Positions 1 to 58,109 of a stretch of DNA of 64,000 bases are shown here, piece by piece. A model generated the notes under the pieces. That model saw nothing but the letters and a program-made list of their open reading frames with translations. It searched no databases and was not told the DNA's origin. The stretch's first letter is position 1. Every line of letters begins with the position of its first letter. Source of the DNA: Macrostomum lignano (lineage: Eukaryota); the NCBI GenBank assembly GCA_002269645.1, contig NIVC01000213.1, positions 1-64,000 of the forward strand. The letters are read 5' to 3'. A program made the translations under genes and the position numbers.

Positions 1-3000
1 AGCTCCTCCGTGGTACGAACTTTCTCGCGAAGCGTTCAGCTGCTGTTGATACTCCAGCACCTGTGCTTCAAGCTCAGTAGCTTTCTCAGAAGAGCACACT
101 GCTTCGTTCTGTACTCTGACAACCGCGATCGCAGCTCCTCCACCTCCTTCTCCTTCGACGATTTCGACTCGCACACATGGTCGTGCTCTTCTTGTAGCGA
201 ACGCAGCTTCTCTTCCAGCATCTCCTTCTCGACTTCAACCTCTTGGATTCTGTCGCTAGATTTTGTAAGCGCTTCGTCTTTAGATTCTAACAGCTGATTC
301 ACTTCAGCTAGACGAGATGTCAGATCACTGCAGTCGGTCTCGATCGCAGATTTAAGCTCCTCCGTGGTACGAACTTTCTCGCGAAGATCGTTCAGCTGCT
401 GTTGATACTCCAGCACCTGTGCTTCAAGCTCAGTAGCTTTCTCAGAAGAGCACACTGCTTCGTTCTGTAACTCTGACAACCGCGATCGCAGCTCCTCCAC
501 CTCCTTCTCCTTCGACGATTTCGACTCGCACACATGGTCGTGCTCTTCTTGTAGCGAACGCAGCTTCTCTTCCAGCATCTCCTTCTCGACTTCAACCTCT
601 TGGATTCTGTCGCTAGATTTTGTAAGCGCTTCGTCTTTAGATTCTAACAGCTGATTCACTTCAGCTAGACGAGATGTCAGATCACTGCAGTCGGTCTCGA
701 TCGCAGATTTAAGCTCCTCCGTGGTACGAACTTTCTCGCGAAGATCGTTCAGCTGCTGTTGATACTCCAGCACCTGTGCTTCAAGCTCAGTAGCTTTCTC
801 AGAAGAGCACACTGCTTCGTTCTGTAACTCTGACAACCGCGATCGCAGCTCCTCCACCTCCTTCTCCTTCGACGATTTCGACTCGCACACATGGTCGTGC
901 TCTTCTTGTAGCGAACGCAGCTTCTCTTCCAGCATCTCCTTCTCGACTTCAACCTCTTGGATTCTGTCGCTAGATTTTGTAAGCGCTTCGTCTTTAGATT
1001 CTAACAGCTGATTCACTTCAGCTAGACGAGATGTCAGATCACTGCAGTCGGTCTCGATCGCAGATTTAAGCTCCTCCGTGGTACGAACTTTCTCGCGAAG
1101 ATCGTTCAGCTGCTGTTGATACTCCAGCACCTGTGCTTCAAGCTCAGTAGCTTTCTCAGAAGAGCACACTGCTTCGTTCTGTAACTCTGACAACCGCGAT
1201 CGCAGCTCCTCCACCTCCTTCTCCTTCGACGATTTCGACTCGCACACATGGTCGTGCTCTTCTTGTAGCGAACGCAGCTTCTCTTCCAGCATCTCCTTCT
1301 CGACTTCAACCTCTTGGATTCTGTCGCTAGATTTTGTAAGCGCTTCGTCTTTAGATTCTAACAGCTGATTCACTTCAGCTAGACGAGATGTCAGATCACT
1401 GCAGTCGGTCTCGATCGCAGATTTAAGCTCCTCCGTGGTACGAACTTTCTCGCGAAGATCGTTCAGCTGCTGTTGATACTCCAGCACCTGTGCTTCAAGC
1501 TCAGTAGCTTTCTCAGAAGAGCACACTGCTTCGTTCTGTAACTCTGACAACCGCGATCGCAGCTCCTCCACCTCCTTCTCCTTCGACGATTTCGACTCGC
1601 ACACATGGTCGTGCTCTTCTTGTAGCGAACGCAGCTTCTCTTCCAGCATCTCCTTCTCGACTTCAACCTCTTGGATTCTGTCGCTAGATTTTGTAAGCGC
1701 TTCGTCTTTAGATTCTAACAGCTGATTCACTTCAGCTAGACGAGATGTCAGATCACTGCAGTCGGTCTCGATCGCAGATTTAAGCTCCTCCGTGGTACGA
1801 ACTTTCTCGCGAAGATCGTTCAGCTGCTGTTGATACTCCAGCACCTGTGCTTCAAGCTCAGTAGCTTTCTCAGAAGAGCACACTGCTTCGTTCTGTAACT
1901 CTGACAACCGCGATCGCAGCTCCTCCACCTCCTTCTCCTTCGACGATTTCGACTCGCACACATGGTCGTGCTCTTCTTGTAGCGAACGCAGCTTCTCTTC
2001 CAGCATCTCCTTCTCGACTTCAACCTCTTGGATTCTGTCGCTAGATTTTGTAAGCGCTTCGTCTTTAGATTCTAACAGCTGATTCACTTCAGCTAGACGA
2101 GATGTCAGATCACTGCAGTCGGTCTCGATCGCAGATTTAAGCTCCTCCGTGGTACGAACTTTCTCGCGAAGATCGTTCAGCTGCTGTTGATACTCCAGCA
2201 CCTGTGCTTCAAGCTCAGTAGCTTTCTCAGAAGAGCACACTGCTTCGTTCTGTAACTCTGACAACCGCGATCGCAGCTCCTCCACCTCCTTCTCCTTCGA
2301 CGATTTCGACTCGCACACATGGTCGTGCTCTTCTTGTAGCGAACGCAGCTTCTCTTCCAGCATCTCCTTCTCGACTTCAACCTCTTGGATTCTGTCGCTA
2401 GATTTTGTAAGCGCTTCGTCTTTAGATTCTAACAGCTGATTCACTTCAGCTAGACGAGATGTCAGATCACTGCAGTCGGTCTCGATCGCAGATTTAAGCT
2501 CCTCCGTGGTACGAACTTTCTCGCGAAGATCGTTCAGCTGCTGTTGATACTCCAGCACCTGTGCTTCAAGCTCAGTAGCTTTCTCAGAAGAGCACACTGC
2601 TTCGTTCTGTAACTCTGACAACCGCGATCGCAGCTCCTCCACCTCCTTCTCCTTCGACGATTTCGACTCGCACACATGGTCGTGCTCTTCTTGTAGCGAA
2701 CGCAGCTTCTCTTCCAGCATCTCCTTCTCGACTTCAACCTCTTGGATTCTGTCGCTAGATTTTGTAAGCGCTTCGTCTTTAGATTCTAACAGCTGATTCA
2801 CTTCAGCTAGACGAGATGTCAGATCACTGCAGTCGGTCTCGATCGCAGATTTAAGCTCCTCCGTGGTACGAACTTTCTCGCGAAGATCGTTCAGCTGCTG
2901 TTGATACTCCAGCACCTGTGCTTCAAGCTCAGTAGCTTTCTCAGAAGAGCACACTGCTTCGTTCTGTAACTCTGACAACCGCGATCGCAGCTCCTCCACC

Positions 3001-6000
3001 TCCTTCTCCTTCGACGATTTCGACTCGCACACATGGTCGTGCTCTTCTTGTAGCGAACGCAGCTTCTCTTCCAGCATCTCCTTCTCGACTTCAACCTCTT
3101 GGATTCTGTCGCTAGATTTTGTAAGCGCTTCGTCTTTAGATTCTAACAGCTGATTCACTTCAGCTAGACGAGATGTCAGATCACTGCAGTCGGTCTCGAT
3201 CGCAGATTTAAGCTCCTCCGTGGTACGAACTTTCTCGCGAAGATCGTTCAGCTGCTGTTGATACTCCAGCACCTGTGCTTCAAGCTCAGTAGCTTTCTCA
3301 GAAGAGCACACTGCTTCGTTCTGTAACTCTGACAACCGCGATCGCAGCTCCTCCACCTCCTTCTCCTTCGACGATTTCGACTCGCACACATGGTCGTGCT
3401 CTTCTTGTAGCGAACGCAGCTTCTCTTCCAGCATCTCCTTCTCGACTTCAACCTCTTGGATTCTGTCGCTAGATTTTGTAAGCGCTTCGTCTTTAGATTC
3501 TAACAGCTGATTCACTTCAGCTAGACGAGATGTCAGATCACTGCAGTCGGTCTCGATCGCAGATTTAAGCTCCTCCGTGGTACGAACTTTCTCGCGAAGA
3601 TCGTTCAGCTGCTGTTGATACTCCAGCACCTGTGCTTCAAGCTCAGTAGCTTTCTCAGAAGAGCACACTGCTTCGTTCTGTAACTCTGACAACCGCGATC
3701 GCAGCTCCTCCACCTCCTTCTCCTTCGACGATTTCGACTCGCACACATGGTCGTGCTCTTCTTGTAGCGAACGCAGCTTCTCTTCCAGCATCTCCTTCTC
3801 GACTTCAACCTCTTGGATTCTGTCGCTAGATTTTGTAAGCGCTTCGTCTTTAGATTCTAACAGCTGATTCACTTCAGCTAGACGAGATGTCAGATCACTG
3901 CAGTCGGTCTCGATCGCAGATTTAAGCTCCTCCGTGGTACGAACTTTCTCGCGAAGATCGTTCAGCTGCTGTTGATACTCCAGCACCTGTGCTTCAAGCT
4001 CAGTAGCTTTCTCAGAAGAGCACACTGCTTCGTTCTGTAACTCTGACAACCGCGATCGCAGCTCCTCCACCTCCTTCTCCTTCGACGATTTCGACTCGCA
4101 CACATGGTCGTGCTCTTCTTGTAGCGAACGCAGCTTCTCTTCCAGCATCTCCTTCTCGACTTCAACCTCTTGGATTCTGTCGCTAGATTTTGTAAGCGCT
4201 TCGTCTTTAGATTCTAACAGCTGATTCACTTCAGCTAGACGAGATGTCAGATCACTGCAGTCGGTCTCGATCGCAGATTTAAGCTCCTCCGTGGTACGAA
4301 CTTTCTCGCGAAGATCGTTCAGCTGCTGTTGATACTCCAGCACCTGTGCTTCAAGCTCAGTAGCTTTCTCAGAAGAGCACACTGCTTCGTTCTGTAACTC
4401 TGACAACCGCGATCGCAGCTCCTCCACCTCCTTCTCCTTCGACGATTTCGACTCGCACACATGGTCGTGCTCTTCTTGTAGCGAACGCAGCTTCTCTTCC
4501 AGCATCTCCTTCTCGACTTCAACCTCTTGGATTCTGTCGCTAGATTTTGTAAGCGCTTCGTCTTTAGATTCTAACAGCTGATTCACTTCAGCTAGACGAG
4601 ATGTCAGATCACTGCAGTCGGTCTCGATCGCAGATTTAAGCTCCTCCGTGGTACGAACTTTCTCGCGAAGATCGTTCAGCTGCTGTTGATACTCCAGCAC
4701 CTGTGCTTCAAGCTCAGTAGCTTTCTCAGAAGAGCACACTGCTTCGTTCTGTAACTCTGACAACCGCGATCGCAGCTCCTCCACCTCCTTCTCCTTCGAC
4801 GATTTCGACTCGCACACATGGTCGTGCTCTTCTTGTAGCGAACGCAGCTTCTCTTCCAGCATCTCCTTCTCGACTTCAACCTCTTGGATTCTGTCGCTAG
4901 ATTTTGTAAGCGCTTCGTCTTTAGATTCTAACAGCTGATTCACTTCAGCTAGACGAGATGTCAGATCACTGCAGTCGGTCTCGATCGCAGATTTAAGCTC
5001 CTCCGTGGTACGAACTTTCTCGCGAAGATCGTTCAGCTGCTGTTGATACTCCAGCACCTGTGCTTCAAGCTCAGTAGCTTTCTCAGAAGAGCACACTGCT
5101 TCGTTCTGTAACTCTGACAACCGCGATCGCAGCTCCTCCACCTCCTTCTCCTTCGACGATTTCGACTCGCACACATGGTCGTGCTCTTCTTGTAGCGAAC
5201 GCAGCTTCTCTTCCAGCATCTCCTTCTCGACTTCAACCTCTTGGATTCTGTCGCTAGATTTTGTAAGCGCTTCGTCTTTAGATTCTAACAGCTGATTCAC
5301 TTCAGCTAGACGAGATGTCAGATCACTGCAGTCGGTCTCGATCGCAGATTTAAGCTCCTCCGTGGTACGAACTTTCTCGCGAAGATCGTTCAGCTGCTGT
5401 TGATACTCCAGCACCTGTGCTTCAAGCTCAGTAGCTTTCTCAGAAGAGCACACTGCTTCGTTCTGTAACTCTGACAACCGCGATCGCAGCTCCTCCACCT
5501 CCTTCTCCTTCGACGATTTCGACTCGCACACATGGTCGTGCTCTTCTTGTAGCGAACGCAGCTTCTCTTCCAGCATCTCCTTCTCGACTTCAACCTCTTG
5601 GATTCTGTCGCTAGATTTTGTAAGCGCTTCGTCTTTAGATTCTAACAGCTGATTCACTTCAGCTAGACGAGATGTCAGATCACTGCAGTCGGTCTCGATC
5701 GCAGATTTAAGCTCCTCCGTGGTACGAACTTTCTCGCGAAGATCGTTCAGCTGCTGTTGATACTCCAGCACCTGTGCTTCAAGCTCAGTAGCTTTCTCAG
5801 AAGAGCACACTGCTTCGTTCTGTAACTCTGACAACCGCGATCGCAGCTCCTCCACCTCCTTCTCCTTCGACGATTTCGACTCGCACACATGGTCGTGCTC
5901 TTCTTGTAGCGAACGCAGCTTCTCTTCCAGCATCTCCTTCTCGACTTCAACCTCTTGGATTCTGTCGCTAGATTTTGTAAGCGCTTCGTCTTTAGATTCT

Positions 6001-9000
6001 AACAGCTGATTCACTTCAGCTAGACGAGATGTCAGATCACTGCAGTCGGTCTCGATCGCAGATTTAAGCTCCTCCGTGGTACGAACTTTCTCGCGAAGAT
6101 CGTTCAGCTGCTGTTGATACTCCAGCACCTGTGCTTCAAGCTCAGTAGCTTTCTCAGAAGAGCACACTGCTTCGTTCTGTAACTCTGACAACCGCGATCG
6201 CAGCTCCTCCACCTCCTTCTCCTTCGACGATTTCGACTCGCACACATGGTCGTGCTCTTCTTGTAGCGAACGCAGCTTCTCTTCCAGCATCTCCTTCTCG
6301 ACTTCAACCTCTTGGATTCTGTCGCTAGATTTTGTAAGCGCTTCGTCTTTAGATTCTAACAGCTGATTCACTTCAGCTAGACGAGATGTCAGATCACTGC
6401 AGTCGGTCTCGATCGCAGATTTAAGCTCCTCCGTGGTACGAACTTTCTCGCGAAGATCGTTCAGCTGCTGTTGATACTCCAGCACCTGTGCTTCAAGCTC
6501 AGTAGCTTTCTCAGAAGAGCACACTGCTTCGTTCTGTAACTCTGACAACCGCGATCGCAGCTCCTCCACCTCCTTCTCCTTCGACGATTTCGACTCGCAC
6601 ACATGGTCGTGCTCTTCTTGTAGCGAACGCAGCTTCTCTTCCAGCATCTCCTTCTCGACTTCAACCTCTTGGATTCTGTCGCTAGATTTTGTAAGCGCTT
6701 CGTCTTTAGATTCTAACAGCTGATTCACTTCAGCTAGACGAGATGTCAGATCACTGCAGTCGGTCTCGATCGCAGATTTAAGCTCCTCCGTGGTACGAAC
6801 TTTCTCGCGAAGATCGTTCAGCTGCTGTTGATACTCCAGCACCTGTGCTTCAAGCTCAGTAGCTTTCTCAGAAGAGCACACTGCTTCGTTCTGTAACTCT
6901 GACAACCGCGATCGCAGCTCCTCCACCTCCTTCTCCTTCGACGATTTCGACTCGCACACATGGTCGTGCTCTTCTTGTAGCGAACGCAGCTTCTCTTCCA
7001 GCATCTCCTTCTCGACTTCAACCTCTTGGATTCTGTCGCTAGATTTTGTAAGCGCTTCGTCTTTAGATTCTAACAGCTGATTCACTTCAGCTAGACGAGA
7101 TGTCAGATCACTGCAGTCGGTCTCGATCGCAGATTTAAGCTCCTCCGTGGTACGAACTTTCTCGCGAAGATCGTTCAGCTGCTGTTGATACTCCAGCACC
7201 TGTGCTTCAAGCTCAGTAGCTTTCTCAGAAGAGCACACTGCTTCGTTCTGTAACTCTGACAACCGCGATCGCAGCTCCTCCACCTCCTTCTCCTTCGACG
7301 ATTTCGACTCGCACACATGGTCGTGCTCTTCTTGTAGCGAACGCAGCTTCTCTTCCAGCATCTCCTTCTCGACTTCAACCTCTTGGATTCTGTCGCTAGA
7401 TTTTGTAAGCGCTTCGTCTTTAGATTCTAACAGCTGATTCACTTCAGCTAGACGAGATGTCAGATCACTGCAGTCGGTCTCGATCGCAGATTTAAGCTCC
7501 TCCGTGGTACGAACTTTCTCGCGAAGATCGTTCAGCTGCTGTTGATACTCCAGCACCTGTGCTTCAAGCTCAGTAGCTTTCTCAGAAGAGCACACTGCTT
7601 CGTTCTGTAACTCTGACAACCGCGATCGCAGCTCCTCCACCTCCTTCTCCTTCGACGATTTCGACTCGCACACATGGTCGTGCTCTTCTTGTAGCGAACG
7701 CAGCTTCTCTTCCAGCATCTCCTTCTCGACTTCAACCTCTTGGATTCTGTCGCTAGATTTTGTAAGCGCTTCGTCTTTAGATTCTAACAGCTGATTCACT
7801 TCAGCTAGACGAGATGTCAGATCACTGCAGTCGGTCTCGATCGCAGATTTAAGCTCCTCCGTGGTACGAACTTTCTCGCGAAGATCGTTCAGCTGCTGTT
7901 GATACTCCAGCACCTGTGCTTCAAGCTCAGTAGCTTTCTCAGAAGAGCACACTGCTTCGTTCTGTAACTCTGACAACCGCGATCGCAGCTCCTCCACCTC
8001 CTTCTCCTTCGACGATTTCGACTCGCACACATGGTCGTGCTCTTCTTGTAGCGAACGCAGCTTCTCTTCCAGCATCTCCTTCTCGACTTCAACCTCTTGG
8101 ATTCTGTCGCTAGATTTTGTAAGCGCTTCGTCTTTAGATTCTAACAGCTGATTCACTTCAGCTAGACGAGATGTCAGATCACTGCAGTCGGTCTCGATCG
8201 CAGATTTAAGCTCCTCCGTGGTACGAACTTTCTCGCGAAGATCGTTCAGCTGCTGTTGATACTCCAGCACCTGTGCTTCAAGCTCAGTAGCTTTCTCAGA
8301 AGAGCACACTGCTTCGTTCTGTAACTCTGACAACCGCGATCGCAGCTCCTCCACCTCCTTCTCCTTCGACGATTTCGACTCGCACACATGGTCGTGCTCT
8401 TCTTGTAGCGAACGCAGCTTCTCTTCCAGCATCTCCTTCTCGACTTCAACCTCTTGGATTCTGTCGCTAGATTTTGTAAGCGCTTCGTCTTTAGATTCTA
8501 ACAGCTGATTCACTTCAGCTAGACGAGATGTCAGATCACTGCAGTCGGTCTCGATCGCAGATTTAAGCTCCTCCGTGGTACGAACTTTCTCGCGAAGATC
8601 GTTCAGCTGCTGTTGATACTCCAGCACCTGTGCTTCAAGCTCAGTAGCTTTCTCAGAAGAGCACACTGCTTCGTTCTGTAACTCTGACAACCGCGATCGC
8701 AGCTCCTCCACCTCCTTCTCCTTCGACGATTTCGACTCGCACACATGGTCGTGCTCTTCTTGTAGCGAACGCAGCTTCTCTTCCAGCATCTCCTTCTCGA
8801 CTTCAACCTCTTGGATTCTGTCGCTAGATTTTGTAAGCGCTTCGTCTTTAGATTCTAACAGCTGATTCACTTCAGCTAGACGAGATGTCAGATCACTGCA
8901 GTCGGTCTCGATCGCAGATTTAAGCTCCTCCGTGGTACGAACTTTCTCGCGAAGATCGTTCAGCTGCTGTTGATACTCCAGCACCTGTGCTTCAAGCTCA

Positions 9001-11668
9001 GTAGCTTTCTCAGAAGAGCACACTGCTTCGTTCTGTAACTCTGACAACCGCGATCGCAGCTCCTCCACCTCCTTCTCCTTCGACGATTTCGACTCGCACA
9101 CATGGTCGTGCTCTTCTTGTAGCGAACGCAGCTTCTCTTCCAGCATCTCCTTCTCGACTTCAACCTCTTGGATTCTGTCGCTAGATTTTGTAAGCGCTTC
9201 GTCTTTAGATTCTAACAGCTGATTCACTTCAGCTAGACGAGATGTCAGATCACTGCAGTCGGTCTCGATCGCAGATTTAAGCTCCTCCGTGGTACGAACT
9301 TTCTCGCGAAGATCGTTCAGCTGCTGTTGATACTCCAGCACCTGTGCTTCAAGCTCAGTAGCTTTCTCAGAAGAGCACACTGCTTCGTTCTGTAACTCTG
9401 ACAACCGCGATCGCAGCTCCTCCACCTCCTTCTCCTTCGACGATTTCGACTCGCACACATGGTCGTGCTCTTCTTGTAGCGAACGCAGCTTCTCTTCCAG
9501 CATCTCCTTCTCGACTTCAACCTCTTGGATTCTGTCGCTAGATTTTGTAAGCGCTTCGTCTTTAGATTCTAACAGCTGATTCACTTCAGCTAGACGAGAT
9601 GTCAGATCACTGCAGTCGGTCTCGATCGCAGATTTAAGCTCCTCCGTGGTACGAACTTTCTCGCGAAGATCGTTCAGCTGCTGTTGATACTCCAGCACCT
9701 GTGCTTCAAGCTCAGTAGCTTTCTCAGAAGAGCACACTGCTTCGTTCTGTAACTCTGACAACCGCGATCGCAGCTCCTCCACCTCCTTCTCCTTCGACGA
9801 TTTCGACTCGCACACATGGTCGTGCTCTTCTTGTAGCGAACGCAGCTTCTCTTCCAGCATCTCCTTCTCGACTTCAACCTCTTGGATTCTGTCGCTAGAT
9901 TTTGTAAGCGCTTCGTCTTTAGATTCTAACAGCTGATTCACTTCAGCTAGACGAGATGTCAGATCACTGCAGTCGGTCTCGATCGCAGATTTAAGCTCCT
10001 CCGTGGTACGAACTTTCTCGCGAAGATCGTTCAGCTGCTGTTGATACTCCAGCACCTGTGCTTCAAGCTCAGTAGCTTTCTCAGAAGAGCACACTGCTTC
10101 GTTCTGTAACTCTGACAACCGCGATCGCAGCTCCTCCACCTCCTTCTCCTTCGACGATTTCGACTCGCACACATGGTCGTGCTCTTCTTGTAGCGAACGC
10201 AGCTTCTCTTCCAGCATCTCCTTCTCGACTTCAACCTCTTGGATTCTGTCGCTAGATTTTGTAAGCGCTTCGTCTTTAGATTCTAACAGCTGATTCACTT
10301 CAGCTAGACGAGATGTCAGATCACTGCAGTCGGTCTCGATCGCAGATTTAAGCTCCTCCGTGGTACGAACTTTCTCGCGAAGATCGTTCAGCTGCTGTTG
10401 ATACTCCAGCACCTGTGCTTCAAGCTCAGTAGCTTTCTCAGAAGAGCACACTGCTTCGTTCTGTAACTCTGACAACCGCGATCGCAGCTCCTCCACCTCC
10501 TTCTCCTTCGACGATTTCGACTCGCACACATGGTCGTGCTCTTCTTGTAGCGAACGCAGCTTCTCTTCCAGCATCTCCTTCTCGACTTCAACCTCTTGGA
10601 TTCTGTCGCTAGATTTTGTAAGCGCTTCGTCTTTAGATTCTAACAGCTGATTCACTTCAGCTAGACGAGATGTCAGATCACTGCAGTCGGTCTCGATCGC
10701 AGATTTAAGCTCCTCCGTGGTACGAACTTTCTCGCGAAGATCGTTCAGCTGCTGTTGATACTCCAGCACCTGTGCTTCAAGCTCAGTAGCTTTCTCAGAA
10801 GAGCACACTGCTTCGTTCTGTAACTCTGACAACCGCGATCGCAGCTCCTCCACCTCCTTCTCCTTCGACGATTTCGACTCGCACACATGGTCGTGCTCTT
10901 CTTGTAGCGAACGCAGCTTCTCTTCCAGCATCTCCTTCTCGACTTCAACCTCTTGGATTCTGTCGCTAGATTTTGTAAGCGCTTCGTCTTTAGATTCTAA
11001 CAGCTGATTCACTTCAGCTAGACGAGATGTCAGATCACTGCAGTCGGTCTCGATCGCAGATTTAAGCTCCTCCGTGGTACGAACTTTCTCGCGAAGATCG
11101 TTCAGCTGCTGTTGATACTCCAGCACCTGTGCTTCAAGCTCAGTAGCTTTCTCAGAAGAGCACACTGCTTCGTTCTGTAACTCTGACAACCGCGATCGCA
11201 GCTCCTCCACCTCCTTCTCCTTCGACGATTTCGACTCGCACACATGGTCGTGCTCTTCTTGTAGCGAACGCAGCTTCTCTTCCAGCATCTCCTTCTCGAC
11301 TTCAACCTCTTGGATTCTGTCGCTAGATTTTGTAAGCGCTTCGTCTTTAGATTCTAACAGCTGATTCACTTCAGCTAGACGAGATGTCAGATCACTGCAG
11401 TCGGTCTCGATCGCAGATTTAAGCTCCTCCGTGGTACGAACTTTCTCGCGAAGATCGTTCAGCTGCTGTTGATACTCCAGCACCTGTGCTTCAAGCTCAG
11501 TAGCTTTCTCAGAAGAGCACACTGCTTCGTTCTGTAACTCTGACAACCGCGATCGCAGCTCCTCCACCTCCTTCTCCTTCGACGATTTCGACTCGCACAC
11601 ATGGTCGTGCTCTTCTTGTAGCGAACGCAGCTTCTCTTCCAGCATCTCCTTCTCGACCTCCACCTCTT
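1..11668 (-). repeat. Coding tandem array, 357-bp unit, about 32.7 copies
   Basis: An identical 119-aa unit recurs through the 3995-aa ORF. The off-frame 67-aa ORFs recur at exact 357-nt spacing (392, 749 ... 11102). The sequence departs from consensus at about 11658-11670. Confidence 0.98.
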
Positions 11669-12937
11669 TAAAGCGATTAGTGAGAAGTGATAGACGAGAA
11701 TTTAGGTCAATGGACTCGCATTCTAAATAGCCTTTGCAATCTTCTGTCGATTGCAGTTCGCAGCGCAAATCATCTAGTTGCTGTTGGTAATGTAGAAGTT
11801 GCTCTTTCAGGTTGGAACTCTCTTTGGAAGAACTCGTGGCTTCGTCCTGTAGTTTCGAAAGTCTGCTCTGCAAGTTATCAACTTCTCTATCTTGGAGTGA
11901 CTTTTCATGACTGAGATTGTTGTAGTTAGTTTGCAGTAACTGAAGCTGTTCACACCGCTGTTTTTCAGTGTACTCTTCAGAGCCGCAGTCGTTTTCCTGA
12001 ATTGATAGTATTTGTCTTTGCAATTCACTATTTACTTCCCGGAGTTTCTTAGCTTCCTCAGGCGAAATAGACTCCTCTTTTATTTGAGTTAGTTGAGCGC
12101 TTAACTCTTCGTTATTGCGTTGAAGAATTTGATTCTGATTTTTAGCTCGTTAATTTGCTGCCGAAGATTATTACGAGTTGGCGATTGGATAGTTTCGAAA
12201 CTAGTTTGTGCATCAGCATCACGTTCAATGCACCTGCTAGTGTTGCTTGCACTGCTCATAAGTTGATTCAGGCGGACTTCTGACTTCTGTTGCCCTACTT
12301 TGCCCGAGTCCGCTGAATTGTTGACATCAGAAAGCTTTTTTTGAAGCTCAGCGATTAGAACGTCTTTCTCAGCTACCAGCTTTTTTTGATTAGTCAGATC
12401 CCGAACCAAGCGACTGTTGGTGGCTAAAACTTTTTCAAGGTTTGGAATTTCATCTCGATTGCTTGAACCAGACAGTTGAGAAGTAATCTTGACAGAAGGG
12501 GTGCTGCAAATGTTCTCTGCACCTGTGTCCTGCTCGGTGTTTAATGCAGTCTGATTAATAGAAAACTCCAAATTGCTGGCTCCTTCAATATTAGCAGCTG
12601 GACCTGGCTCTCTGATTGTCTTCGGTAGAGGAATGGATGTCTGCTTGATTGGCCTCGACGATTGGGCCTGGCCTGTATCCAATGACGGTACTGGCAAATT
12701 GCTTTCTGCAAAAGGCAGAAATGGGAAAAAGGTGATGGGAACCTGTGAATAATGTATCCTGTACTCGAACTGACATCGCTTAAATTACTTACTTTGGAGC
12801 CGAATTTTCTTGATACTCGGCTCATTTGCAGACAATTGCTGACCAAAGATACGTGGACGAGCAATTTTTGAGGTTCTGATAGTATCAGAATCTGCTTTTG
12901 GAGGGTTTACAGTACCCCCATCGGGTGTCTTCGACAT
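1..12937 (-). CDS. Giant tandem-repeat coiled-coil protein, over 4,200 aa in the window; 3' end lies beyond the left edge
   Basis: ATG at 12937 (MSKTPDGGTVNPPK...). Exon 12937-12793, then an 87-nt phase-1 GT-AG intron 12792-12706 (GTAAGT...ttctgccttttgcag), then a huge exon from 12705 leftwards. ORF 12101-12697 joins ORF 36-12023 if one A is added to the 5-base run at 12139-12143 (gives INELKNQNQILQRNNEELSAQL...). Two indels relative to the repeat consensus (about 113 and about 32) total 3 nt, so the frame is restored at the left edge. E/K/L/S-rich with continuous heptads. Confidence 0.9.
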
Positions 12938-12957
12938 TAGAATAAGTTAGATGAGGC

Positions 12958-12985
12958 ACTGAAAATCCAAAAAAACAACTTGCAT
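12958..12985 (-). other. 3' splice acceptor about 21 nt upstream of the giant-gene ATG (5'UTR intron or trans-splice site)
   Basis: Minus strand reads ttttttttggattttcag|tgcctcatctaacttattctaATG. Confidence 0.5.
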
Positions 12986-14188
12986 GTAATTTTTTGGTTA
13001 AAGTAGAAATTAAAGAAAGTTAAAATCAGTATTATAGAATAATTTTGCTTATACAACTATGACTGATGATGTACTAGCTTTTAAAATGAATATTGCTAAC
13101 ATAAGCAATAAAAAGAACAAAAAGATTTGTTTTTATCTTTTGAATATGTACAAATGGGACTAATAGACACCATGCCTATGAAACTATTTAGGCCTTTGAA
13201 GTCTTATTTTTATATTGATAGTAGTGAAAAAATTGCACTTTTTATCCATTTTTTGCACTTTTAAGTAGGAAGACAACTAAGACCTAAACATTCTCTATAA
13301 AGAGCTTAGGATGGGTGCAAAATTTGGTGCCATTTGGTTGAGTGGTAGTGGTTTAGGAGTCCATAGCAAACAAATTGTATATAGACCCACATAGACAGAC
13401 TTAATATTTTTAGTGAAATAATTTTTAGTATATTGGATTTTTTTAATTATTTTTTTTATAAATTAACATTTCTAATTTAGTAAGTAAAATGTTTTTTAAC
13501 AATTACTTTTTAATTTCTTACTTTTAGAAATTTTTTAATTAAAGATGTTTTAATTACAAAGTTTTGCAAACAGATATTTACATTTTTCTAGCATACTATG
13601 TAATAGATTTGAGAGTGTAGCTATGGGTCATTCTATGAGAGGATCCATCATGTTTTTGAACTTCAATTTTTTTTAGTTTCAAAAAGCAGTCTGTATTATG
13701 GTTCAAAAGTCTCTTGTGAAATGACCTCTAGTAGATAAATAAATATAAATACTTTCAATTTCCAACTTTTTGAAACTTTTGCTAGACACTCAGGGGATAT
13801 CCAAAATTAAATATAGATAGATAATGTTAGTTTCTGTGAAAAATCTCCTTACCTTAAAACTTTCCATGCCCCAATTGTTAGCTATTAACCTCTTGGTTAG
13901 AGGGCCTTCCAAGGTCCAATAATTATCTATCTACTCTTAAAAAGACCCAATATATCAATATCCATGAAAAATATATAGTTAAATTATCTTTTAGACTTCA
14001 AGGTCTAGATTGTATAATAGTGTATGTCAGAACAAGAATCTTATTGTAGCTAAATATACACTAGTATATGCAAAAAACAGAAAATTTACATAAATTTCAT
14101 GACAAAAATTTTTCCTAAAGTCATTCAGTTTTTACAAGTTGATTGTGTAGAGTTTTCAAAACAAATTTTTATAAGAAAACCTCTTTAT

Positions 14189-15552
14189 GGGATGTTCCAT
14201 AAGTACTTATACTTTTGCATGCTGCTCAGGAACTACGCAACCAATCATTGTAAGTTTTATGTTGCTGGAAAGCGGCTTTACTCATCTTTAATCTGTCGCC
14301 AAAATCATTTCGTTCTGTCAACTATGTCAAAAGTTACAACAAAAAACGTAGTCAAAGGTCACCCATAGACTTACAAGAAATTTTCAAAATCAAAACTTCA
14401 AAGTTCAGCAGGCAGAGTTATTTCGGATTCTACATAATGCATTCTTTTTTGCTTCATAAGCGAATGCCACACCCTTTTCGTCTATGGAAAATACTGGCCT
14501 AAGCTTTCACAGCATCTTAATCTTAAGATCACAGCATCTTAATCTTGTAAAGTTTCACCACCTTGGCTGCTGCTGCATCACCATGGATGTGAACTCAAGG
14601 GAAGGACAGCGCGCTGCAATTTTTACCCTCTGGAAACTCGGAAAAAAGCGATCAGAGATTTATGCGGATTTATGCAACATTCATGGAGCTAATGCGGTGA
14701 GCAGGATGACCGTCTACAACTGGGTTGAGCAGTTCGAAGCAGGAAGGACCAATCCTCCGGTAAAAGCTCAAAGGGACGCACATGGAAAGAAGATCATGCT
14801 GTCTCTGTTTTTCGACTGCAATGGTCCTCTAACTGTCGAGTTTTTGGAGCCAAACACTACAATAAACTCTGAGCGCTACGTTGAAACGCTAACAAAGCTG
14901 CATCATGACATCCAGAACAAGCGTCGTGAAAATCCCAGACCTTTCATTCTTCATCATGACAATGCAAGGCCTCATACAGCACAAAAGACAGTCGAGGCAA
15001 TCAGCAAGCTGAAGCTCCATCTTCTACCTCACCCTCCTTACTCTCCAGACCTGGCACCAGCAGACTTTGCTTTATTTCCAGAGTTGAAGCGCCATCTGAA
15101 AGGACGCGTGTACGAGACCAGGAACCAGATCGAGGAGGAAGTCCGCAGAATTCTGCTGTATGTCATCCCCCGACAGCTGTACGCAGAAGCCATCAAAAGC
15201 ATGTTTAACAGGTGGACCAAGTGCATCAACTCCGGTGGAAACTACGTTGAGAAGGTGTCGGTACCGACTGAGGATGAGTGACAAAGAAGTCAAACTTTCT
15301 GTCATCAACAAGGCGCCTCTGTTTTCATGCTTGCCATTGTAGTTGTTGCTCTTTAAATTTCTTGTAAGTCTATGGGTGACCTTTGACTACGTTTTTTGTT
15401 GTAACTTTTGACATAGTTGACAGAACGAAATGATTTTGGCGACAGATTAAAGATGAGTAAAGCCGCTTTCCAGCGACATAAAACTTACAATGATTGGTTG
15501 CGTAGTTCCTGAGCAGCATGCAAAAGTATAAGTACTTATGGAACATCCCTCG
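14189..15552 (+). mobile_element. Mariner (DD34D)-family element with long ~195-bp TIRs, internally deleted
   Basis: 14189-14383 is the reverse complement of 15355-15549, with one mismatch seen (tatgttgctgga vs tatgtcgctgga). The right end is ...CATCCCTCG|TA. The left end reads TA-T-GGGATG, with the terminal CGA replaced by T. Encloses a transposase ORF. Confidence 0.93.
14583..15281 (+). CDS. Mariner transposase with an in-frame internal deletion (232 aa from ATG 14583)
   Basis: The N-terminal HTH-like segment (RAAIFTLWKLGKKRSEIYADL...TVYNWVEQFEAGR) is fused directly to PPVK...HGKKIMLSLFFD...TINSERY. It has HHDNARPH and PHPPYSPDLAPADF with 34 residues between the last two Asp. The WVPHEL linker and the first catalytic TGDE motif are absent. 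Confidence 0.9.
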   Translation: MDVNSREGQRAAIFTLWKLGKKRSEIYADLCNIHGANAVSRMTVYNWVEQFEAGRTNPPVKAQRDAHGKKIMLSLFFDCNGPLTVEFLEPNTTINSERYVETLTKLHHDIQNKRRENPRPFILHHDNARPHTAQKTVEAISKLKLHLLPHPPYSPDLAPADFALFPELKRHLKGRVYETRNQIEEEVRRILLYVIPRQLYAEAIKSMFNRWTKCINSGGNYVEKVSVPTEDE

Positions 15553-18500
15553 TAACAATATAACAAATATGTTCATTTAAATAAAAAAATTAAACATTTA
15601 AGAAAATGATGCATAGGCCTAATTTAAGTTTTTAGCTAGAAGGAATTTTCTTTTTTTACATAAACACATTTATTTACATTGAATCTTTCATGCTTGGCAT
15701 GAATTTGTTAATAAAAATCCATATAATAAAAATGGTCTGTCTATGTCTATATGATCAATTAGAGAAAAATAGCTAGACTGATTTTCTTTGAACCTACACT
15801 GTTCTTGGACTGGACTTGGACTGTTGTTTGTTATAATTAAAAACTTTTAGAATTCAACTTTTAATTTTATCATGAACATAAAAGCCTACCATGGCTCAAA
15901 GTTTAAATTTTATAATTTAGTATAATTATTTGCTTTTTTAACTGTTTTAGGATACAACAACAATAAGGAATAAAATTGCTTTAGCACATGGTATATAAAA
16001 GAAAAAATAGTTAAATTTTTTCAGTGCATATAGGACAGTACACCCTCTTGACTATATGGTGTCTACTAACAAATTTACTATTTCTTAGGGAAAATTCTGG
16101 CTTCTAGTCAATCTACTACAAGACAATCCGGTGTAGACAATTTGGCAATAGTCAAAGTGGTAACAAATGATCCGGCAACAGATTTTGATTTATAGATTTT
16201 ATATGAAATTTAGATACAAATGGGACTTTATATGCAGTTCTTTTATCTTAATCTTACATACTCCAGCTCCCAATGCTGCTCTTTGCCCACTTGCTGACGA
16301 TCTTTACCTGCTTGTTACATATGAAGAATTTATTTTAATTAGGACGGCATCTTTTCTAATAAAATGGAACACTGGCTATACTTCTGAAATAATTTAGGGT
16401 GGTGAAATCAAACATTTTAATGTAATAATGTTTGGAATTTTTTTACATACATGAGGATTGTTGGAGCTTCCCAGTTGACATCTCCATTAAGCTATGATGC
16501 AGAAAATAACTGTTGGATAGTTAGCATCTGATTATAAAACTAGTGTGCATTCCTTACTGAAAATAAAGAATGCATCAAAGCTATCAATTTAAATGTGATT
16601 TCCTTTTTTAAAGCAATGTACAAGAAAATAAGCTGTTGAAACTTGCAGATTTTAAACCTGCTAAATTTCATGCGGAACTCTTGCATACATTTCATTAAAA
16701 ATAAAAAAATAATATAATATAAATATATAAGGCCTAAAATTAATTATTAACAATTATACATAGGCCTAACAGTTATAATAGTTTTGATAGGCCTAATAGT
16801 AATACATATAAAAGCTCTCTAATGTGTCTCAATGTAAAATAGCCAATTTAATACCTTGTCACTAGATTGATTGTCGCCAGATTGTCTGTCGCTGGATCAT
16901 CCTATTGCCAGATTGACTGGATATTAAAATTCTCATGTGCAACAAGGTCCTAGAGAGTCCAATACTGCATGCATAGTATATATCAAAGATTAGGCAATTT
17001 TTTTTACTTGGGCTGATGCATTGATCCATATCATTGATGATGATATGGCAAGGTGGTTGGCTTTAGCTACATATAGGTGGGTTTATACATGTAGACTAAC
17101 TAAAAATGAAGCTCAAATTTGAAATTAACACCATTGAAAAACCCTATCATGGACAAAATTATAAGTCTTTAACCCTATCAAAACTGAAACTATTCTACAC
17201 CTATCTCCTTAAAGTTAAAGAAGGTCCCATACTGTAGGTCTACTGCCATGCCCATAGTCATAGCGACATAGGGCCTAGCCTAGCCATGGGATGGCATGGG
17301 CCTATCATTTCACAATCTGCTATAATATGAAAATCAATTAAATGAACAATAATTATTTATAATCGAAGCCAGTTTAATCCCCTTACAGTTTAATCCACCT
17401 AGAACTAGAAGACAGTAGATCATATATCCACAGTAAATTATATCATATCCTAACATCAAGTGTAGGCGAGCACTAGGCTTGGCAAAGGCCGCAGCAAAGC
17501 TCAGCCGAAATTCAATTTCGAGGACATGACATCGGAATTGGCCGTTGAACTAGGACTTCGTTGTGACGATGACGAGTGCCGTGCGAGGAGAGCTACCACT
17601 ACACTACTACAACAGTATTGTCCGCGCGCATGCTGCTTCCAGTAAAAAAAATTTGAACTGACAGCTGATTCGTTTTAGGTTTTTAAACACCTATTACTAA
17701 TGCTAAATTAAGGTATAATAAGAGCAATTACTTTATGTAAATTTAAAGCTTTATCATTTACTCTTTTACTGAATTTGTTTTAATAGTTGCTGCAAACTTT
17801 AAAGTTTAAAACACACAACACAGGGTCTTCCTAGGGGCAAAGTCAAAACGAGGGCATCGCGAGTTTACACCATTCAAACTTTGTAATACCAAATTGTATC
17901 TGTTTTCTAATGAGTATGGCCGGTTAAATCTTGCATTAAACTGTGAATTATAAATAATTTTACTATAATCTAAGTAAAATTAGTCTTTTTCGCTCCTCTA
18001 AAAGACAAAATATGTCCTTTTCAGCGATAATTTTTTTGGCGGAAATTCAACCACGTTGAACACGTGTGAAAAAAATCTATATAATTTACAAATAAGGGCT
18101 AAAAATGTAGGAATTAATATAGATGGTGAAAGTTTTGAGTTAATTTGCATTAAATGCATGCATGAGTAATGCTTTATTTGCATAAACCCTACTGTAGTTC
18201 GAATATTCTTCGTTTTGGTAGTAAACATTGATTATGACATCCCACCTATATGCTCATATGAGAATATGTTAAAAACTAATCTAAATTGATGTATCCAATT
18301 GGATTATTCACTTTTACATTTTAGAAATTAATTTAGCATAAAATCGATGCTTTTTATTGAAAAAGCCTAATATATTACTTATTGTATAACATTCTATAAC
18401 AATATAAAAATACTTTTTAATAGTTAGAGAGCACAAAGTGATTTTCTCCAGTAGTCTGTTGCATCAAAATGAATAATTGCCAGCTTTTAGAATTGAAATA

Positions 18501-40514: not shown

Positions 40515-42794
<2,280 letters not shown>

Positions 42795-47360: not shown

Positions 47361-48044
47361 CACAGAGCAGTCAGATGAAGAAAGCATCTTGAGCAGACTC
47401 CACTATACACAGGCCAGAATCGTACAGTCACAATTTTTTTCAAATGCATTCTCAGATCAGCTGAAGTGATGCAGCTCAGCAGGCATTATTCAGCTGCTGG
47501 TCTCACGGCTAGTGTTTATTTCCCGAGCTAGCTGGATAAAAACTCGCCACTCCCAAAATTCAGCACGCGATGACGGAGTCAGAGGGGGGCGGCATACACA
47601 AAAAGCGCCGCACGGGCGCTTATATTGATGAAGCGGCGAGGAAGCTGGCTAGTCTAGGATAGAACAAAAGTACTCCGAGTTTGAAAGCAACGAAGGGGCA
47701 GGCAAATGCAGACGCATACAGAGCTTCATCTTCCAACTTAAATAACTGGCTACTTTGCATTGGCTGGATACTGTTTCAGGAAATGTAACTTTACGAGGGC
47801 ATTGCGCTTTCATGCCTAACTAGCTGGTAATTAATCGTATTAATCATTCTGACTCAATGCAATATTCAACGCAAAATTAGACATTGTCTCCGCTGCCAAA
47901 TGCTGATATACAGCCCGAGAGTCCCTGCTGTGCTTGTCGAGTAATTTCTGCAAATGCAGATCTGGAGTGAGCAGGCAGACAGGGGCAGCCTGAGGGGCAG
48001 TTTCTAACCCTACTTCACCGTCTGCGCAGGTGGCTGTGGCGCCA

Positions 48045-50311: not shown

Positions 50312-50924
50312 AACCAAGTTAGGTACATAATCAGGGCGCACTTAATCCATTTAAAATTAGGTGAGTTAGATCAGGCAGATCATTTTTATACCTGGATAAA
50401 AGTATAAACGATTGATAGTTTAAAAAATTTCATACGGTTCCAGCAAAATTTCCTTTCGCTCTCAGATTGACTGCTTTTAATAAAATAATTCTCATTCTTT
50501 GTAGATTAAACTGCGGCTTGCGGCGGGGAGCCACTTTGATGTCTGATCATAAATTCAATCGGAGCTTTGACTCAGACGGGCACTGCATAAAAGCCTGGTT
50601 GGGAAAAACTGCAGTGAAAATATTGGTTCAGCAGTCAGCCAGCGGCTTCAATGCGTGAGCTCTGGCTATTGAAATTGGCACACAATAGGAGCGCTTCATA
50701 TATGCCTTCAATCAAGCTATTCAATGAATTTCACTGATTTATTTGGTTTTTTCTCTGAACAAAACTGTTATAAAAAATTCAATAAGAAATTTTCAGCTGG
50801 GGTAAAAATGATTGATTGATTTCTATGCCTTATACGTTGCCTTGAGCCGAACTCGGAAGATGTTTTGCACCAATCTTACTTTAAATGTCACTGTCTCATT
50901 TTTATGTTTTTAAACTGCGAAGTG

Positions 50925-57524: not shown

Positions 57525-58109
<585 letters not shown>

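What the first reader, a model, noticed from the sequence alone, without database searches (positions are those of the whole stretch)
1..12937. Giant protein of 33+ identical 17-heptad modules: a candidate length-encoded coiled-coil rod or ruler
Seen: the 357-bp unit encodes 119 aa, exactly 17 heptads. Counting from EVEVEKEM, positions 2+7n are hydrophobic in 12 of 17 and positions 6+7n in 13 of 17. The register runs across unit junctions with no stutter. One Cys per unit (TDC) sits at a core position and two others are outside it. Established: a coiled coil rises about 0.15 nm per residue, giving about 18 nm per unit and at least about 580 nm for the copies in this window. Inference: an uninterrupted rod whose length is set by repeat copy number, possibly disulfide-stitched, headed by a low-complexity S/P-rich N-terminus. 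I do not recognise it as a named family; it may be a lineage-specific structural fibre (centrosome, rootlet, sperm or secreted).
Basis: partly seen in the sequence, partly recalled or inferred. Interest (0 to 1): 0.82.

Follow-up and report, generated by a model that had tools for sequence, protein, structure and literature searches.

The report
Giant repeat coiled-coil protein, flatworm
This is a real gene of the flatworm Macrostomum lignano for a 4,762-residue protein whose middle is 33 identical 119-residue blocks predicted to form one coiled-coil rod about 0.65 micrometres long; it has no detectable relatives or known function, but it belongs to a familiar kind of protein.

Summary
Window 1-11668 (minus strand) is a 357-bp array of 32.7 units. 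Thirty-one units are base-for-base identical, and each encodes 119 aa, exactly 17 heptads in one unbroken register. The DNA is Macrostomum lignano. In the public Mlig_3_7 assembly, one 33.8-kb contig spans the whole locus and gives an intact three-exon ORF of 4,762 aa (546 kDa, pI 4.6). That protein has a basic, disordered head of about 137 aa and a proline-free helical stretch of 4,386 aa containing 33 identical units. It ends in a basic Ala/Ser/Pro/Arg tail with the C-terminal sequence CKTS. GenBank holds the gene only as four "hypothetical protein, partial" fragments taken from an RNA-seq-based annotation. A duplicated locus (synonymous divergence about 0.024) is also spanned. It has 21.4 non-identical units, whose differences lean towards synonymous changes. 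No relatives were found outside the species, and no Pfam family passes its threshold. The rod reading is supported. The disulfide idea is weakened: there is no signal peptide, and the core Cys is Ser in 19 of 21 units of the duplicate. A strict ruler is untested and is hard to reconcile with 33 versus 21 units in one genome. I judge it an orphan member of the known class of giant repeat coiled-coil tether or fibre proteins, of moderate interest.

The parts
12793..12937 (-). Exon 1. ATG at 12937, encoding aa 1-48 of the basic, disordered head; GTAAGT donor at 12792.
   Evidence: Translation and splice model. It is identical to the N-terminus of GenBank PAA65872.1 / P0004.
12706..12792 (-). Intron 1, 87 nt, GT..AG.
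   Evidence: The spliced product matches P0003 and P0004. The same intron lies at 3089-3175 of NIVC01001609.1.
12440..12705 (-). Start of exon 2, encoding the rest of the disordered head (aa 49-137). It contains two [ST]x[IL]P motifs, SNLP at aa 50 and TSIP at aa 71.
   Evidence: AlphaFold2 gives no secondary structure and pLDDT mostly below 50 for residues 1-137.
11669..12439 (-). Helical region before the array (aa 138-395), made of progressively decayed copies of the same unit. It aligns to two consecutive units at 29% identity over 228 aa, and the stretch next to the array is much more similar.
   Evidence: BLASTP of the N-terminal region against two units, E = 2e-27. AlphaFold2 places helices from residue 138.
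12139..12143 (-). A5 run where the window has one base fewer than Mlig_3_7 (A6) and than the duplicated locus (AAAAGA). This creates an apparent frameshift that I judge to be an assembly indel.
   Evidence: The flanks differ from the public contig by 0 mismatches and 12 gap openings in 4.7 kb.
1..11668 (-). The 357-bp coding array, 32.7 units in the window. Protein units start at 11666 and every 357 nt downward. Unit 33 starts at 242 and is cut by the window start. Two deletions (2 bp after position 32, 1 bp near position 111) create a false stop at 36-38.
   Evidence: The same array is complete in NIVC01001609.1, with 33 protein-identical units plus a 41-aa partial unit.

Best explanation
The window holds the 5' two-thirds of a Macrostomum lignano gene for an intracellular, 4,762-residue (546 kDa), very acidic structural protein.

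**Shown**
- The gene has three exons and an intact ORF across the whole array in a spanning public contig.
- It encodes 33 protein-identical 119-residue units of 17 heptads each, in one continuous register.
- The head is basic and predicted disordered. The tail is basic and ends in CKTS.
- A duplicated locus carries 21 heterogeneous units. Its differences from this locus are biased towards synonymous and conservative changes.

**Inferred**
- Two chains pair in parallel and in register into a single alpha-helical coiled-coil rod. The rod would be about 650 nm long for 33 units and about 450 nm for 21 units.
- The rod serves as a long spacer, tether or fibre element. The two basic, disordered ends make the attachments.
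- The most specific guess is that the head binds microtubules or EB proteins through its SxIP-like motifs. On the same guess, the tail sits on a membrane or partner through farnesylation of CKTS next to an Arg-rich patch.
- Rod length scales with unit number, but unit number is evolutionarily labile. The array is kept uniform, and is expanded or contracted, by unequal crossing-over or gene conversion between units. The decayed units at the 5' edge escaped this homogenisation.
For: **Array and heptads:**

**Species and spanning contig:** P0001, P0003 and P0004 are M. lignano GenBank proteins. NIVC01001609.1 carries the N-terminus, 33.3 units and the C-terminus as one open frame of 4,762 aa.

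**Same haplotype as the window:** 0 mismatches in 4.7 kb of flank.

**Transcript basis of the gene models:** the Mlig_3_7 annotation is a StringTie/TACO genome-guided RNA-seq assembly (PMC5730564).

**Selection:** between the two loci dS is about 0.024, with omega 0.42 in the N-terminal region and 0.22 in the C-terminal region. Among array variants, 9 sites are synonymous and 7 non-synonymous, and the core changes are conservative, L>V and V>F.

**Rod continuity:** a proline-free stretch runs from aa 265 to 4650, with hydrophobic occupancy of 0.70 and 0.69 at two of the seven positions, and one register carries into both flanks.

**Dimer hints:** Lys and His are tolerated at the 'a' position, and g-e' pairs are 4 attractive to 1 repulsive.

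**Ends:** head residues 1-137 are predicted disordered. The head has pI 10.4 and two [ST]x[IL]P motifs. The tail has pI 11.5 and ends in CKTS. CENP-E and CENP-F are farnesylated at CKTQ and CKVQ (PMC4384735).

**Homogenisation:** locus A units are identical. Locus B units are a mosaic of 10 recurrent variants. Decayed units flank the array on its 5' side.
Against: - I found no expression pattern, localisation or phenotype.
- Oligomer state and chain orientation were not tested. The AlphaFold2 monomer model of three units breaks the helix at SSEK (unit residues 51-54) once per unit, leaving helices of about 115 residues. This may mean fold-back hairpins rather than one straight rod.
- The SxIP-like and CaaX-like motifs are four-residue patterns. 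I estimate roughly a 0.2 chance of one [ST]x[IL]P in a head of this size. I found no published evidence that CKTS is prenylated.
- Both spanning contigs probably rest on the same PacBio data set, so the copy numbers are assembler estimates.
- Locus B carries 1-bp deletions in 9 of 21 units. They sit at sites where units differ, which points to consensus artefacts. If they are real, locus B is a pseudogene.
- A net charge of about -15 per unit argues against simple lateral self-assembly.
Confidence: 0.6

Rival explanations
1. Fibre former. The rods do not act singly. They pack side by side or end to end into a larger cytoskeletal fibre such as a striated rootlet-like, sperm or muscle-associated structure, with the basic head and tail binding the acidic rods of neighbouring molecules.
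For: The layout of basic head (pI 10.4), acidic rod (pI 4.6) and basic tail (pI 11.5) resembles that of intermediate filaments. There are weak sub-threshold Pfam hits to Filament and Myosin_tail_1. The strict 119-residue periodicity would give a regular axial repeat of 17.7 nm.
Against: There is no 28-residue or other long-range charge periodicity, and no favoured axial stagger. The best charge-match offsets are only 5-9 residues. The net charge is -15 per unit. The Filament score of 22.8 bits is below the 40-bit cut-off, and Myosin_tail_1 at 18.6 bits is below 38.1.
Confidence: 0.2
2. Folded accordion. Each chain folds back at the weak SSEK segment in every unit, so helices of about 115 residues pack antiparallel into a shorter, thicker bundle instead of a 650-nm rod.
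For: The AlphaFold2 monomer model of three units (mean pLDDT 86) has helices 2-50, 55-169, 174-288 and 293-356, with 4-residue breaks exactly once per unit. The core is weakest there, with a = Ala, d = Ser, a = Ala. The best local Foldseek match, although not significant, is an antiparallel helical bundle, IpaB 3u0c.
Against: Monomer AlphaFold2 commonly folds dimeric coiled coils back on themselves, and pTM is only 0.41. There is a single a/d hydrophobic stripe, no Pro or Gly, and no register shift at the supposed turn. A serial zigzag would need each helix to bury two faces. No Foldseek match is significant; all have E of 1 or more.
Confidence: 0.12
3. Artefact or dead DNA. The array is over-expanded by the assembler, or it is a satellite or pseudogene whose open frame reflects only recent copying of one open unit.
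For: Identical units carry no information about selection. The window itself has a frameshift at 12139-12143 and a stop at 36-38. Locus B has 1-bp deletions in 9 of 21 units. Canu read correction and Pilon polishing can homogenise repeats (method described in PMC5730564).
Against: The polished public contig has none of the window's indels and gives one intact 4,762-aa ORF. The window differs from it only by indels, with 0 mismatches. Locus B retained its unit variants, so the pipeline does not erase variation wholesale. The B deletions fall exactly on variable sites. Unique flanks and unit variants show omega of 0.2-0.4. RNA-seq-derived gene models cover both ends and the array interior.
Confidence: 0.05
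4. Secreted, disulfide-cross-linked extracellular fibre, one of the first reader's options.
For: There are three Cys per unit, one at a core position. The species does make giant repetitive secreted adhesive proteins; this rests on my own knowledge and was not checked here.
Against: The N-terminus MSKTPDGGTVNPPKADSD... has no hydrophobic signal sequence. The core Cys is Ser in 19 of 21 units of the duplicated locus, while 5 units gain a different Cys through R>C. The C-terminal CxxX motif and the acidic coiled-coil composition are typical of cytoplasmic proteins.
Confidence: 0.03

Closest known systems
C. elegans ANC-1 (nesprin-1/2 orthologue) central repeats
   Same: [quoted passage not shown] The repeats are predicted to be helical and are needed for the protein's spacing and anchoring role (PMC8139857).
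   Different: ANC-1 has six repeats of 903 residues, predicted to form spectrin-like three-helix bundles. It also has calponin-homology domains and a KASH/transmembrane end. Here there are 33 repeats of 119 residues in one heptad register, with none of those domains and no sequence similarity.
CENP-F, CENP-E and Spindly (farnesylated coiled-coil proteins)
   Same: They are long coiled coils that end in a CxxX farnesylation motif: CKVQ, CKTQ and CPQQ (PMC4384735). This protein ends in CKTS, preceded by an Arg-rich patch.
   Different: There is no homology; Pfam CENP-F_leu_zip scores 13.4 bits against a 34.5-bit cut-off. There is no motor domain and no identical tandem units in those proteins. 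Prenylation of CKTS is untested.
Myosin II rod, paramyosin and rootletin (long two-stranded coiled-coil fibre proteins)
   Same: They are two-stranded heptad-based rods hundreds of nanometres long.
   Different: From my own knowledge, those rods contain skip residues and a 28-residue charge repeat that drives staggered packing. Neither is seen here, and Myosin_tail_1 is below threshold. This rod is about four times longer than a myosin rod and is built from identical modules.
Intermediate filaments and lamins
   Same: They share the layout of basic head, acidic coiled-coil rod and tail. Lamins also end in CaaX.
   Different: Pfam Filament scores 22.8 and 15.4 bits against a 40-bit cut-off. The rod here is about 14 times longer. 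No Ig-fold tail was detected.
Streptococcal M proteins (recalled from memory, not checked here)
   Same: They are dimeric coiled-coil fibrils containing tandem repeat blocks. Copy number changes by recombination within the gene and alters fibril length.
   Different: They are bacterial, secreted and wall-anchored, far shorter, and under immune selection.

Membership tests
Canonical heptad coiled coil (structural class) | 3.5-residue hydrophobic periodicity with a/d core occupancy, and no helix breakers | tested here: met
   Hydrophobic residues fill 12 of 17 and 10-13 of 17 heptads at the two core positions. The Fourier peak is at 3.50 residues and no shuffle of 20,000 reached it. The unit has no Pro or Gly. 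Occupancy is 0.70 and 0.69 over 4,384 residues.
Canonical heptad coiled coil (structural class) | Parallel, in-register, two-stranded pairing | not testable with these tools
   Only monomer AlphaFold2 was available. The g-e' pair count of 4 attractive to 1 repulsive is compatible with this pairing but not decisive.
Intermediate filament (Pfam PF00038) | Score at or above the Pfam gathering threshold of 40 bits | tested here: not met
   22.8 bits for two units and 15.4 bits for the N-terminal region.
Myosin tail (PF01576) / paramyosin-type rod | Pfam threshold of 38.1 bits, and a 28-residue charge periodicity | tested here: not met
   18.6 bits. The charge Fourier analysis has no 28-residue (or 28/3-residue) peak, and no preferred long stagger appears.
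Spectrin-like repeat (the ANC-1 / nesprin kind) | Three-helix bundle of about 106 residues with loops and register shifts | tested here: not met
   There is no spectrin Pfam hit. The register is uninterrupted. AlphaFold2 helices are about 115 residues long rather than about 30. The Foldseek match to spectrin 3edv has probability 0.02.
CaaX-prenylated proteins | Cys at position -4 from the C-terminus, followed by residues the transferase accepts | tested here: met
   The protein ends ...PPNCKTS, and the ending is the same in the duplicated locus. It is one residue away from the CKTQ of CENP-E.
CaaX-prenylated proteins | Actual farnesylation of the Cys | not testable with these tools
   A literature search for CKTS together with farnesyl found nothing relevant.
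SxIP microtubule plus-end-tracking proteins | [ST]x[IL]P motif in a basic, Ser/Pro-rich disordered region | tested here: met
   TSIP at aa 71 and SNLP at aa 50 lie in a head with pI 10.4 that is predicted disordered. A chance match is plausible.
SxIP microtubule plus-end-tracking proteins | Binding to the EB1 EBH domain, or plus-end tracking | not testable with these tools
   This needs a binding assay or live imaging.
Phage tape-measure domain (PF24622 TMP_4) / ATG16 (PF08614) | Score at or above the Pfam gathering threshold (27 and 33.7 bits) | tested here: not met
   26.5 and 33.3 bits, both just under threshold. They are two of 63 families hit by the same two-unit query, which is the pattern of generic coiled-coil similarity.
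Molecular ruler (functional class) | One defined length that sets the size of another structure | tested here: inconclusive
   The same genome assembly carries a 33.3-unit locus and a 21.4-unit locus. This argues against a single fixed length but does not test function.

The most novel reading that the evidence does not exclude
A natural single-molecule spacer. It would be a perfectly periodic, stutter-free two-stranded coiled coil of about 0.65 micrometres. One end would be anchored by a farnesylated basic tail, and the other would hold microtubules or EB proteins through a disordered SxIP head. Its length, and therefore a cellular spacing, would be tuned in 17.7-nm steps by gain and loss of identical 357-bp units. 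This would make it a genetically editable ruler in a flatworm that can be made transgenic.
Probability: 0.08. Interest if true: 0.75.

Novelty: new member of a known kind. Interest (0 to 1): 0.4.

Why it matters
- **Annotation fix.** Four fragmentary GenBank entries (PAA65872.1, the 655-aa and 264-aa models called at 5392-7356 and 7534-8325 of NIVC01001609.1, and PAA65875.1) are pieces of one 4,762-aa gene. PAA57501.1 and A0A1I8HCS0 belong to its 21-unit duplicate.
- **Unusual rod.** A proline-free heptad stretch of about 4,400 residues with no stutter would be among the longest regular coiled coils described. Its exact modularity makes it attractive for studying how coiled-coil length and periodic weak-core segments affect mechanics, and as a template for protein materials.
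- **Concerted evolution.** The pair of loci, one with 33 identical units and one with 21 mosaic units, is a clean natural example of homogenisation and copy-number drift inside a coding array after a recent genome duplication.
- **Testable.** M. lignano supports in situ hybridisation, RNAi and transgenesis (PMC5730564), so the function can be examined directly.
- **Limit.** No function is established here, and long repetitive coiled-coil proteins are a known kind of protein.

Tried and rejected
- **Pfam on head, unit and tail.** Only sub-threshold generic coiled-coil hits: 63 families for the unit and none for the head.
- **PDB sequence search with two units.** Only the reovirus sigma-1 coiled coil, at E about 1e-3. 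This is uninformative.
- **Foldseek of the three-unit model against PDB.** No match with E below 1.
- **Word-indexed protein searches and an exhaustive HMMER search of 1.84 billion representatives with the C-terminal 436 aa.** Only M. lignano's own fragments came back. I saved the third homologue search as unlikely to add anything.
- **Literature.** No paper mentions this gene or a comparable Macrostomum protein.
- **Gene identifiers searched in supplements of four M. lignano papers; a fifth had no files held.** No occurrences, so there is no expression class. Stored files may be truncated.
- **Exact look-up of P0002 in assemblies.** Not on record.
- **My first working idea, now rejected.** I thought the assembly breaks inside the array, with N- and C-termini on different contigs and 60 or more units. 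P0004 lies on the same 33.8-kb contig as P0001, and the array there is 33.3 units.
- **Charge-stagger and charge-periodicity analysis.** No myosin-like signal.
- **Tropomyosin-like actin period (119/3 = 39.7 residues).** Considered, but the internal self-similarity is at 56/63 residues, not about 40.
Full report
**1. The observation**

Tandem Repeats Finder reports a single array at window 1-11668, with period 357, 32.7 copies and 99% matches. The region has about 50% G+C against about 34% in the flanking DNA, and a strong strand skew.

Of the six frames only one is open, on the minus strand at 36..12023. Exact comparison shows 31 consecutive units that are 100% identical in DNA. The unit nearest the gene's 5' end differs only at its edge. 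The unit cut by the window start carries a 2-bp and a 1-bp deletion, which produce a local frameshift and a stop at 36-38.

The unit encodes 119 aa, which is 17.0 heptads, with no Pro or Gly:
- Counting from EVEVEKEM, positions 2+7n are I/L/M/V/F/W/Y in 12 of 17 heptads.
- Positions 6+7n are hydrophobic in 10 of 17, or 12 with Ala and 13 with Cys.
- The strongest Fourier component of hydrophobicity is at 3.50 residues, and none of 20,000 shuffles matched it.
- C90 (in TDC) is at a core position. C24 and C50 are not.

**2. Whose DNA it is, and the whole gene**

A protein search with the reconstructed N-terminus plus two units returned only two Macrostomum lignano proteins. Each begins with 35-37 residues of the unit (identical in P0001, one change in P0002) and then continues into a unique C-terminal sequence (P0001 = PAA65875.1; P0002 = A0A1I8HCS0). 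A search with the N-terminus alone found P0003 (PAA57501.1, 98% identical). Its cluster also holds P0004 (PAA65872.1), which is identical to my spliced model of the window's N-terminus plus 2.8 units.

P0004 and P0001 lie on the same 33,815-bp contig of assembly Mlig_3_7, NIVC01001609.1. I joined the two fetched pieces of that contig and obtained the following gene structure:

| Feature | Position in NIVC01001609.1 |
|---|---|
| ATG | 2944 |
| Intron 1 (87 nt) | 3089-3175 |
| Exon 2 | 3176-17031 |
| Intron 2 | 17032-17287 |
| Exon 3 | 17288-17575 |

Exon 2 contains one edge unit, 32 DNA-identical units and a final 110-nt partial unit.

The ORF is intact and encodes 4,762 aa (546 kDa, pI 4.6). 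It has 33 protein-identical units at aa 396-4322.

The window's flank matches this contig with 0 mismatches and 12 gap openings in 4.7 kb. The window is therefore the same haplotype from a differently polished assembly. Its apparent frameshift at the A-run 12139-12143 (A5 against A6) and the two deletions at 1-120 are indel errors, not biology.

GenBank represents this one gene as four "hypothetical protein, partial" models of 728, 655, 264 and 436 aa.

**3. Is the array real and expressed?**

Mlig_3_7 was assembled from PacBio reads with Canu and polished with Pilon. Its gene models come from a genome-guided RNA-seq transcriptome built with StringTie, TACO and TBONE (PMC5730564). Transcript-derived models therefore exist for both ends and for the interior of the array, although none is full length.

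A second locus, on the 208.7-kb contig NIVC01002479.1 (L002), has flanks syntenic with the window at 91-98% identity. It is also completely spanned, with the N-terminus, 21.4 units and the same C-terminal tail. This fits the 180 Mb of duplicated blocks at 95% identity or more reported for this line.

The units of locus B are not identical. Ten sites recur in mosaic combinations, and several are fixed or nearly fixed differences from the locus A unit. Because variation survived assembly in B, the perfect uniformity of A is unlikely to be a polishing artefact alone.

The 1-bp deletions in B fall exactly on sites where its units differ (positions 43/44, 200, 270 and 307). This is the signature of consensus confusion. 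I treat them as artefacts but cannot exclude that B is decaying.

**4. Selection**

| Comparison | Synonymous | Non-synonymous | Result |
|---|---|---|---|
| N-terminal unique region, A vs B | 6 | 9 | dS 0.024, omega 0.42 |
| C-terminal coiled coil, A vs B | 5 | 4 | dS 0.025, omega 0.22 |
| Variable sites within the array | 9 | 7 | core changes conservative: L>V, V>F |

The counts are small but consistently show more synonymous change than expected without constraint.

The core Cys (C90) is Ser in 19 of 21 units of locus B, and five B units gain a Cys through R>C. Cysteine positions are therefore not conserved.

**5. Anatomy of the protein**

- **Head (aa 1-137).** It is 31% Ser+Thr+Pro, with pI 9.2 overall and 10.4 for the first 90 residues. 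It has no hydrophobic signal sequence. AlphaFold2 gives no secondary structure and pLDDT mostly below 50. It contains SNLP at aa 50 and TSIP at aa 71, which match the [ST]x[IL]P pattern of EB-binding plus-end trackers in the typical basic S/P-rich context. I treat this as a lead only.
- **Region before the array (aa 138-395).** It is helical and aligns to two consecutive units at 29% identity, E = 2e-27. Similarity rises towards the array. These are old units at the edge that escaped homogenisation.
- **Rod.** A proline-free stretch of 4,386 residues runs from aa 265 to 4650. Two of the seven heptad positions are about 70% hydrophobic throughout. My crude register tracking keeps one register from about aa 225, through the array, to about 220 residues into the C-terminal unique region, where it shifts once. 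At 0.1485 nm per residue the rod is about 650 nm long for locus A and about 450 nm for locus B.
- **Unit details.** Net charge is about -15. The g-e' pairs are 4 attractive to 1 repulsive. There is no myosin-like charge periodicity or preferred long stagger. An internal 56/63-residue self-similarity suggests an older duplication of 8 plus 9 heptads.
- **Tail (last 89 aa).** It is rich in Ala, Ser, Pro and Arg, has pI 11.5, and ends ...SPRSSRRRTSAAPEEERPPNCKTS. CKTS differs by one residue from the farnesylation motif CKTQ of CENP-E (PMC4384735). I found no data on CKTS itself.

**6. Structure prediction**

The AlphaFold2 monomer model of three units (mean pLDDT 86, pTM 0.41) gives helices 2-50, 55-169, 174-288 and 293-356. 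The only breaks are at SSEK (unit residues 51-54), which is the weakest part of the core. Confidence also dips at the unit junction.

This may be the usual monomer artefact, in which the chain folds back to bury its hydrophobic stripe. It may also mark periodic hinges. I keep it as a rival reading. Foldseek against the PDB gave nothing significant.

**7. Homology and family membership**

No Pfam family passes its cut-off for the head, the unit or the tail. The unit query hit 63 coiled-coil-type families weakly. ATG16 (33.3 against 33.7 bits) and the phage tape-measure domain TMP_4 (26.5 against 27) came closest, which is the pattern of compositional similarity. An exhaustive HMMER search of 1.84 billion representative proteins with the C-terminal 436 aa found only the duplicate's product.

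At the sequence level the gene is an orphan in the collections available. These collections probably lack other Macrostomum species, so "lineage-specific" means only "no relatives found here".

**8. Most likely mechanism**

*Shown:* a real, intact gene with transcript-derived models, encoding a giant acidic protein that has an uninterrupted heptad rod and basic disordered ends.

*Inferred:*
- The rod is a parallel, in-register dimer that acts as a long intracellular spacer, tether or fibre element.
- Its length is proportional to unit number.
- The ends make the attachments, possibly microtubules or EB proteins at the head and a farnesyl-plus-basic patch at the tail.
- Unequal crossing-over or gene conversion keeps the units uniform and changes their number.

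The presence of 33 and 21 units in one genome argues against a ruler that must have one exact length. It does not argue against length mattering.

The disulfide-stitched or secreted reading is disfavoured. There is no signal peptide, the Cys positions are not conserved, and the C-terminal motif is cytoplasmic in type.

**9. Comparison with known systems, and verdict**

The closest analogue in architecture and repeat genetics is C. elegans ANC-1, with six 903-residue repeats nearly identical in DNA (PMC8139857). ANC-1 differs in predicted fold and in its end domains.

CENP-F, CENP-E and Spindly share the combination of a long coiled coil and a C-terminal CxxX motif, but there is no homology. 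Myosin, paramyosin, rootletin and the intermediate filaments share the rod principle, but this protein fails their membership tests.

This is a new, orphan member of the known class of giant repetitive coiled-coil proteins. Interest is moderate: the protein is striking in its regularity and size, and it can be tested in a tractable animal, but no function is yet attached to it.

Noticed in passing
window 14189-15549: A mariner/Tc1-like element of 1,361 bp with 222-nt terminal inverted repeats (94% complementary). Its 265-aa ORF (14484-15281) hits HTH_48 and Transposase_1/DDE_3. The element is absent from the matching point of the duplicated locus (L002 position 8763). It is therefore a recent insertion, about 1.25 kb upstream of the giant gene's ATG.
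   Followed up: partly
window ~17832-22169: A stretch of about 4.3 kb is present in the window but absent from the syntenic flank of the duplicated locus, between L002 6135 and 6160. It is probably another insertion. Its one ORF over 110 aa has no Pfam hit.
   Followed up: no
window 55393-56292 (minus strand): A 299-aa ORF matches Pfam ASC, the amiloride-sensitive sodium channel (DEG/ENaC) family, at E = 1.7e-12. It is preceded by poly-Ala and poly-Gln tracts and is probably the first exon of a channel gene.
   Followed up: partly
window 27000-64000: This region is a patchwork of more than 25 unrelated micro- and minisatellite arrays. Examples are (TAGA)x262 at 41311-42360, a 44-bp unit x51 at 48041-50258, (CTAA)x147 at 57521-58109, a 22-bp unit x67 at 61936-63397 and a 16-bp unit x71 at 50921-52050. 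G+C jumps from about 0.32 to 0.44-0.60 at about 28 kb. This fits the 15% simple and tandem repeats reported for this genome.
   Followed up: no
window 12139-12143 and 1-120: The window carries single-base and 2-bp indels relative to the polished public contig, with 0 mismatches and 12 gap openings in 4.7 kb. It therefore comes from a less polished long-read assembly of the same haplotype, and apparent frameshifts in it should not be read as pseudogenisation.
   Followed up: yes
L002 11271-18872 (NIVC01002479.1): The duplicated locus has 21.4 units carrying 10 recurrent variable sites in mosaic combinations. One unit, at L002 14839, differs from the locus A unit at only 3 sites. One-base deletions sit exactly at the variable sites, which looks like consensus confusion during assembly.
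   Followed up: partly
L001 11141-11195 and 11671-12235; L002 19901-19955 and 20434-20852: The last intron and the 3' flank of the gene contain a 23-bp and a 20-bp minisatellite that are conserved in position between the two loci.
   Followed up: no
unit residues 1-119 (for example window 11310-11666): The 119-residue unit shows internal self-similarity at cyclic offsets of 56 and 63 residues, which are 8 and 9 heptads. The score is 83, against a shuffle maximum of 53 and 52 for other multiples of seven. This suggests the unit arose from an older duplication.
   Followed up: partly
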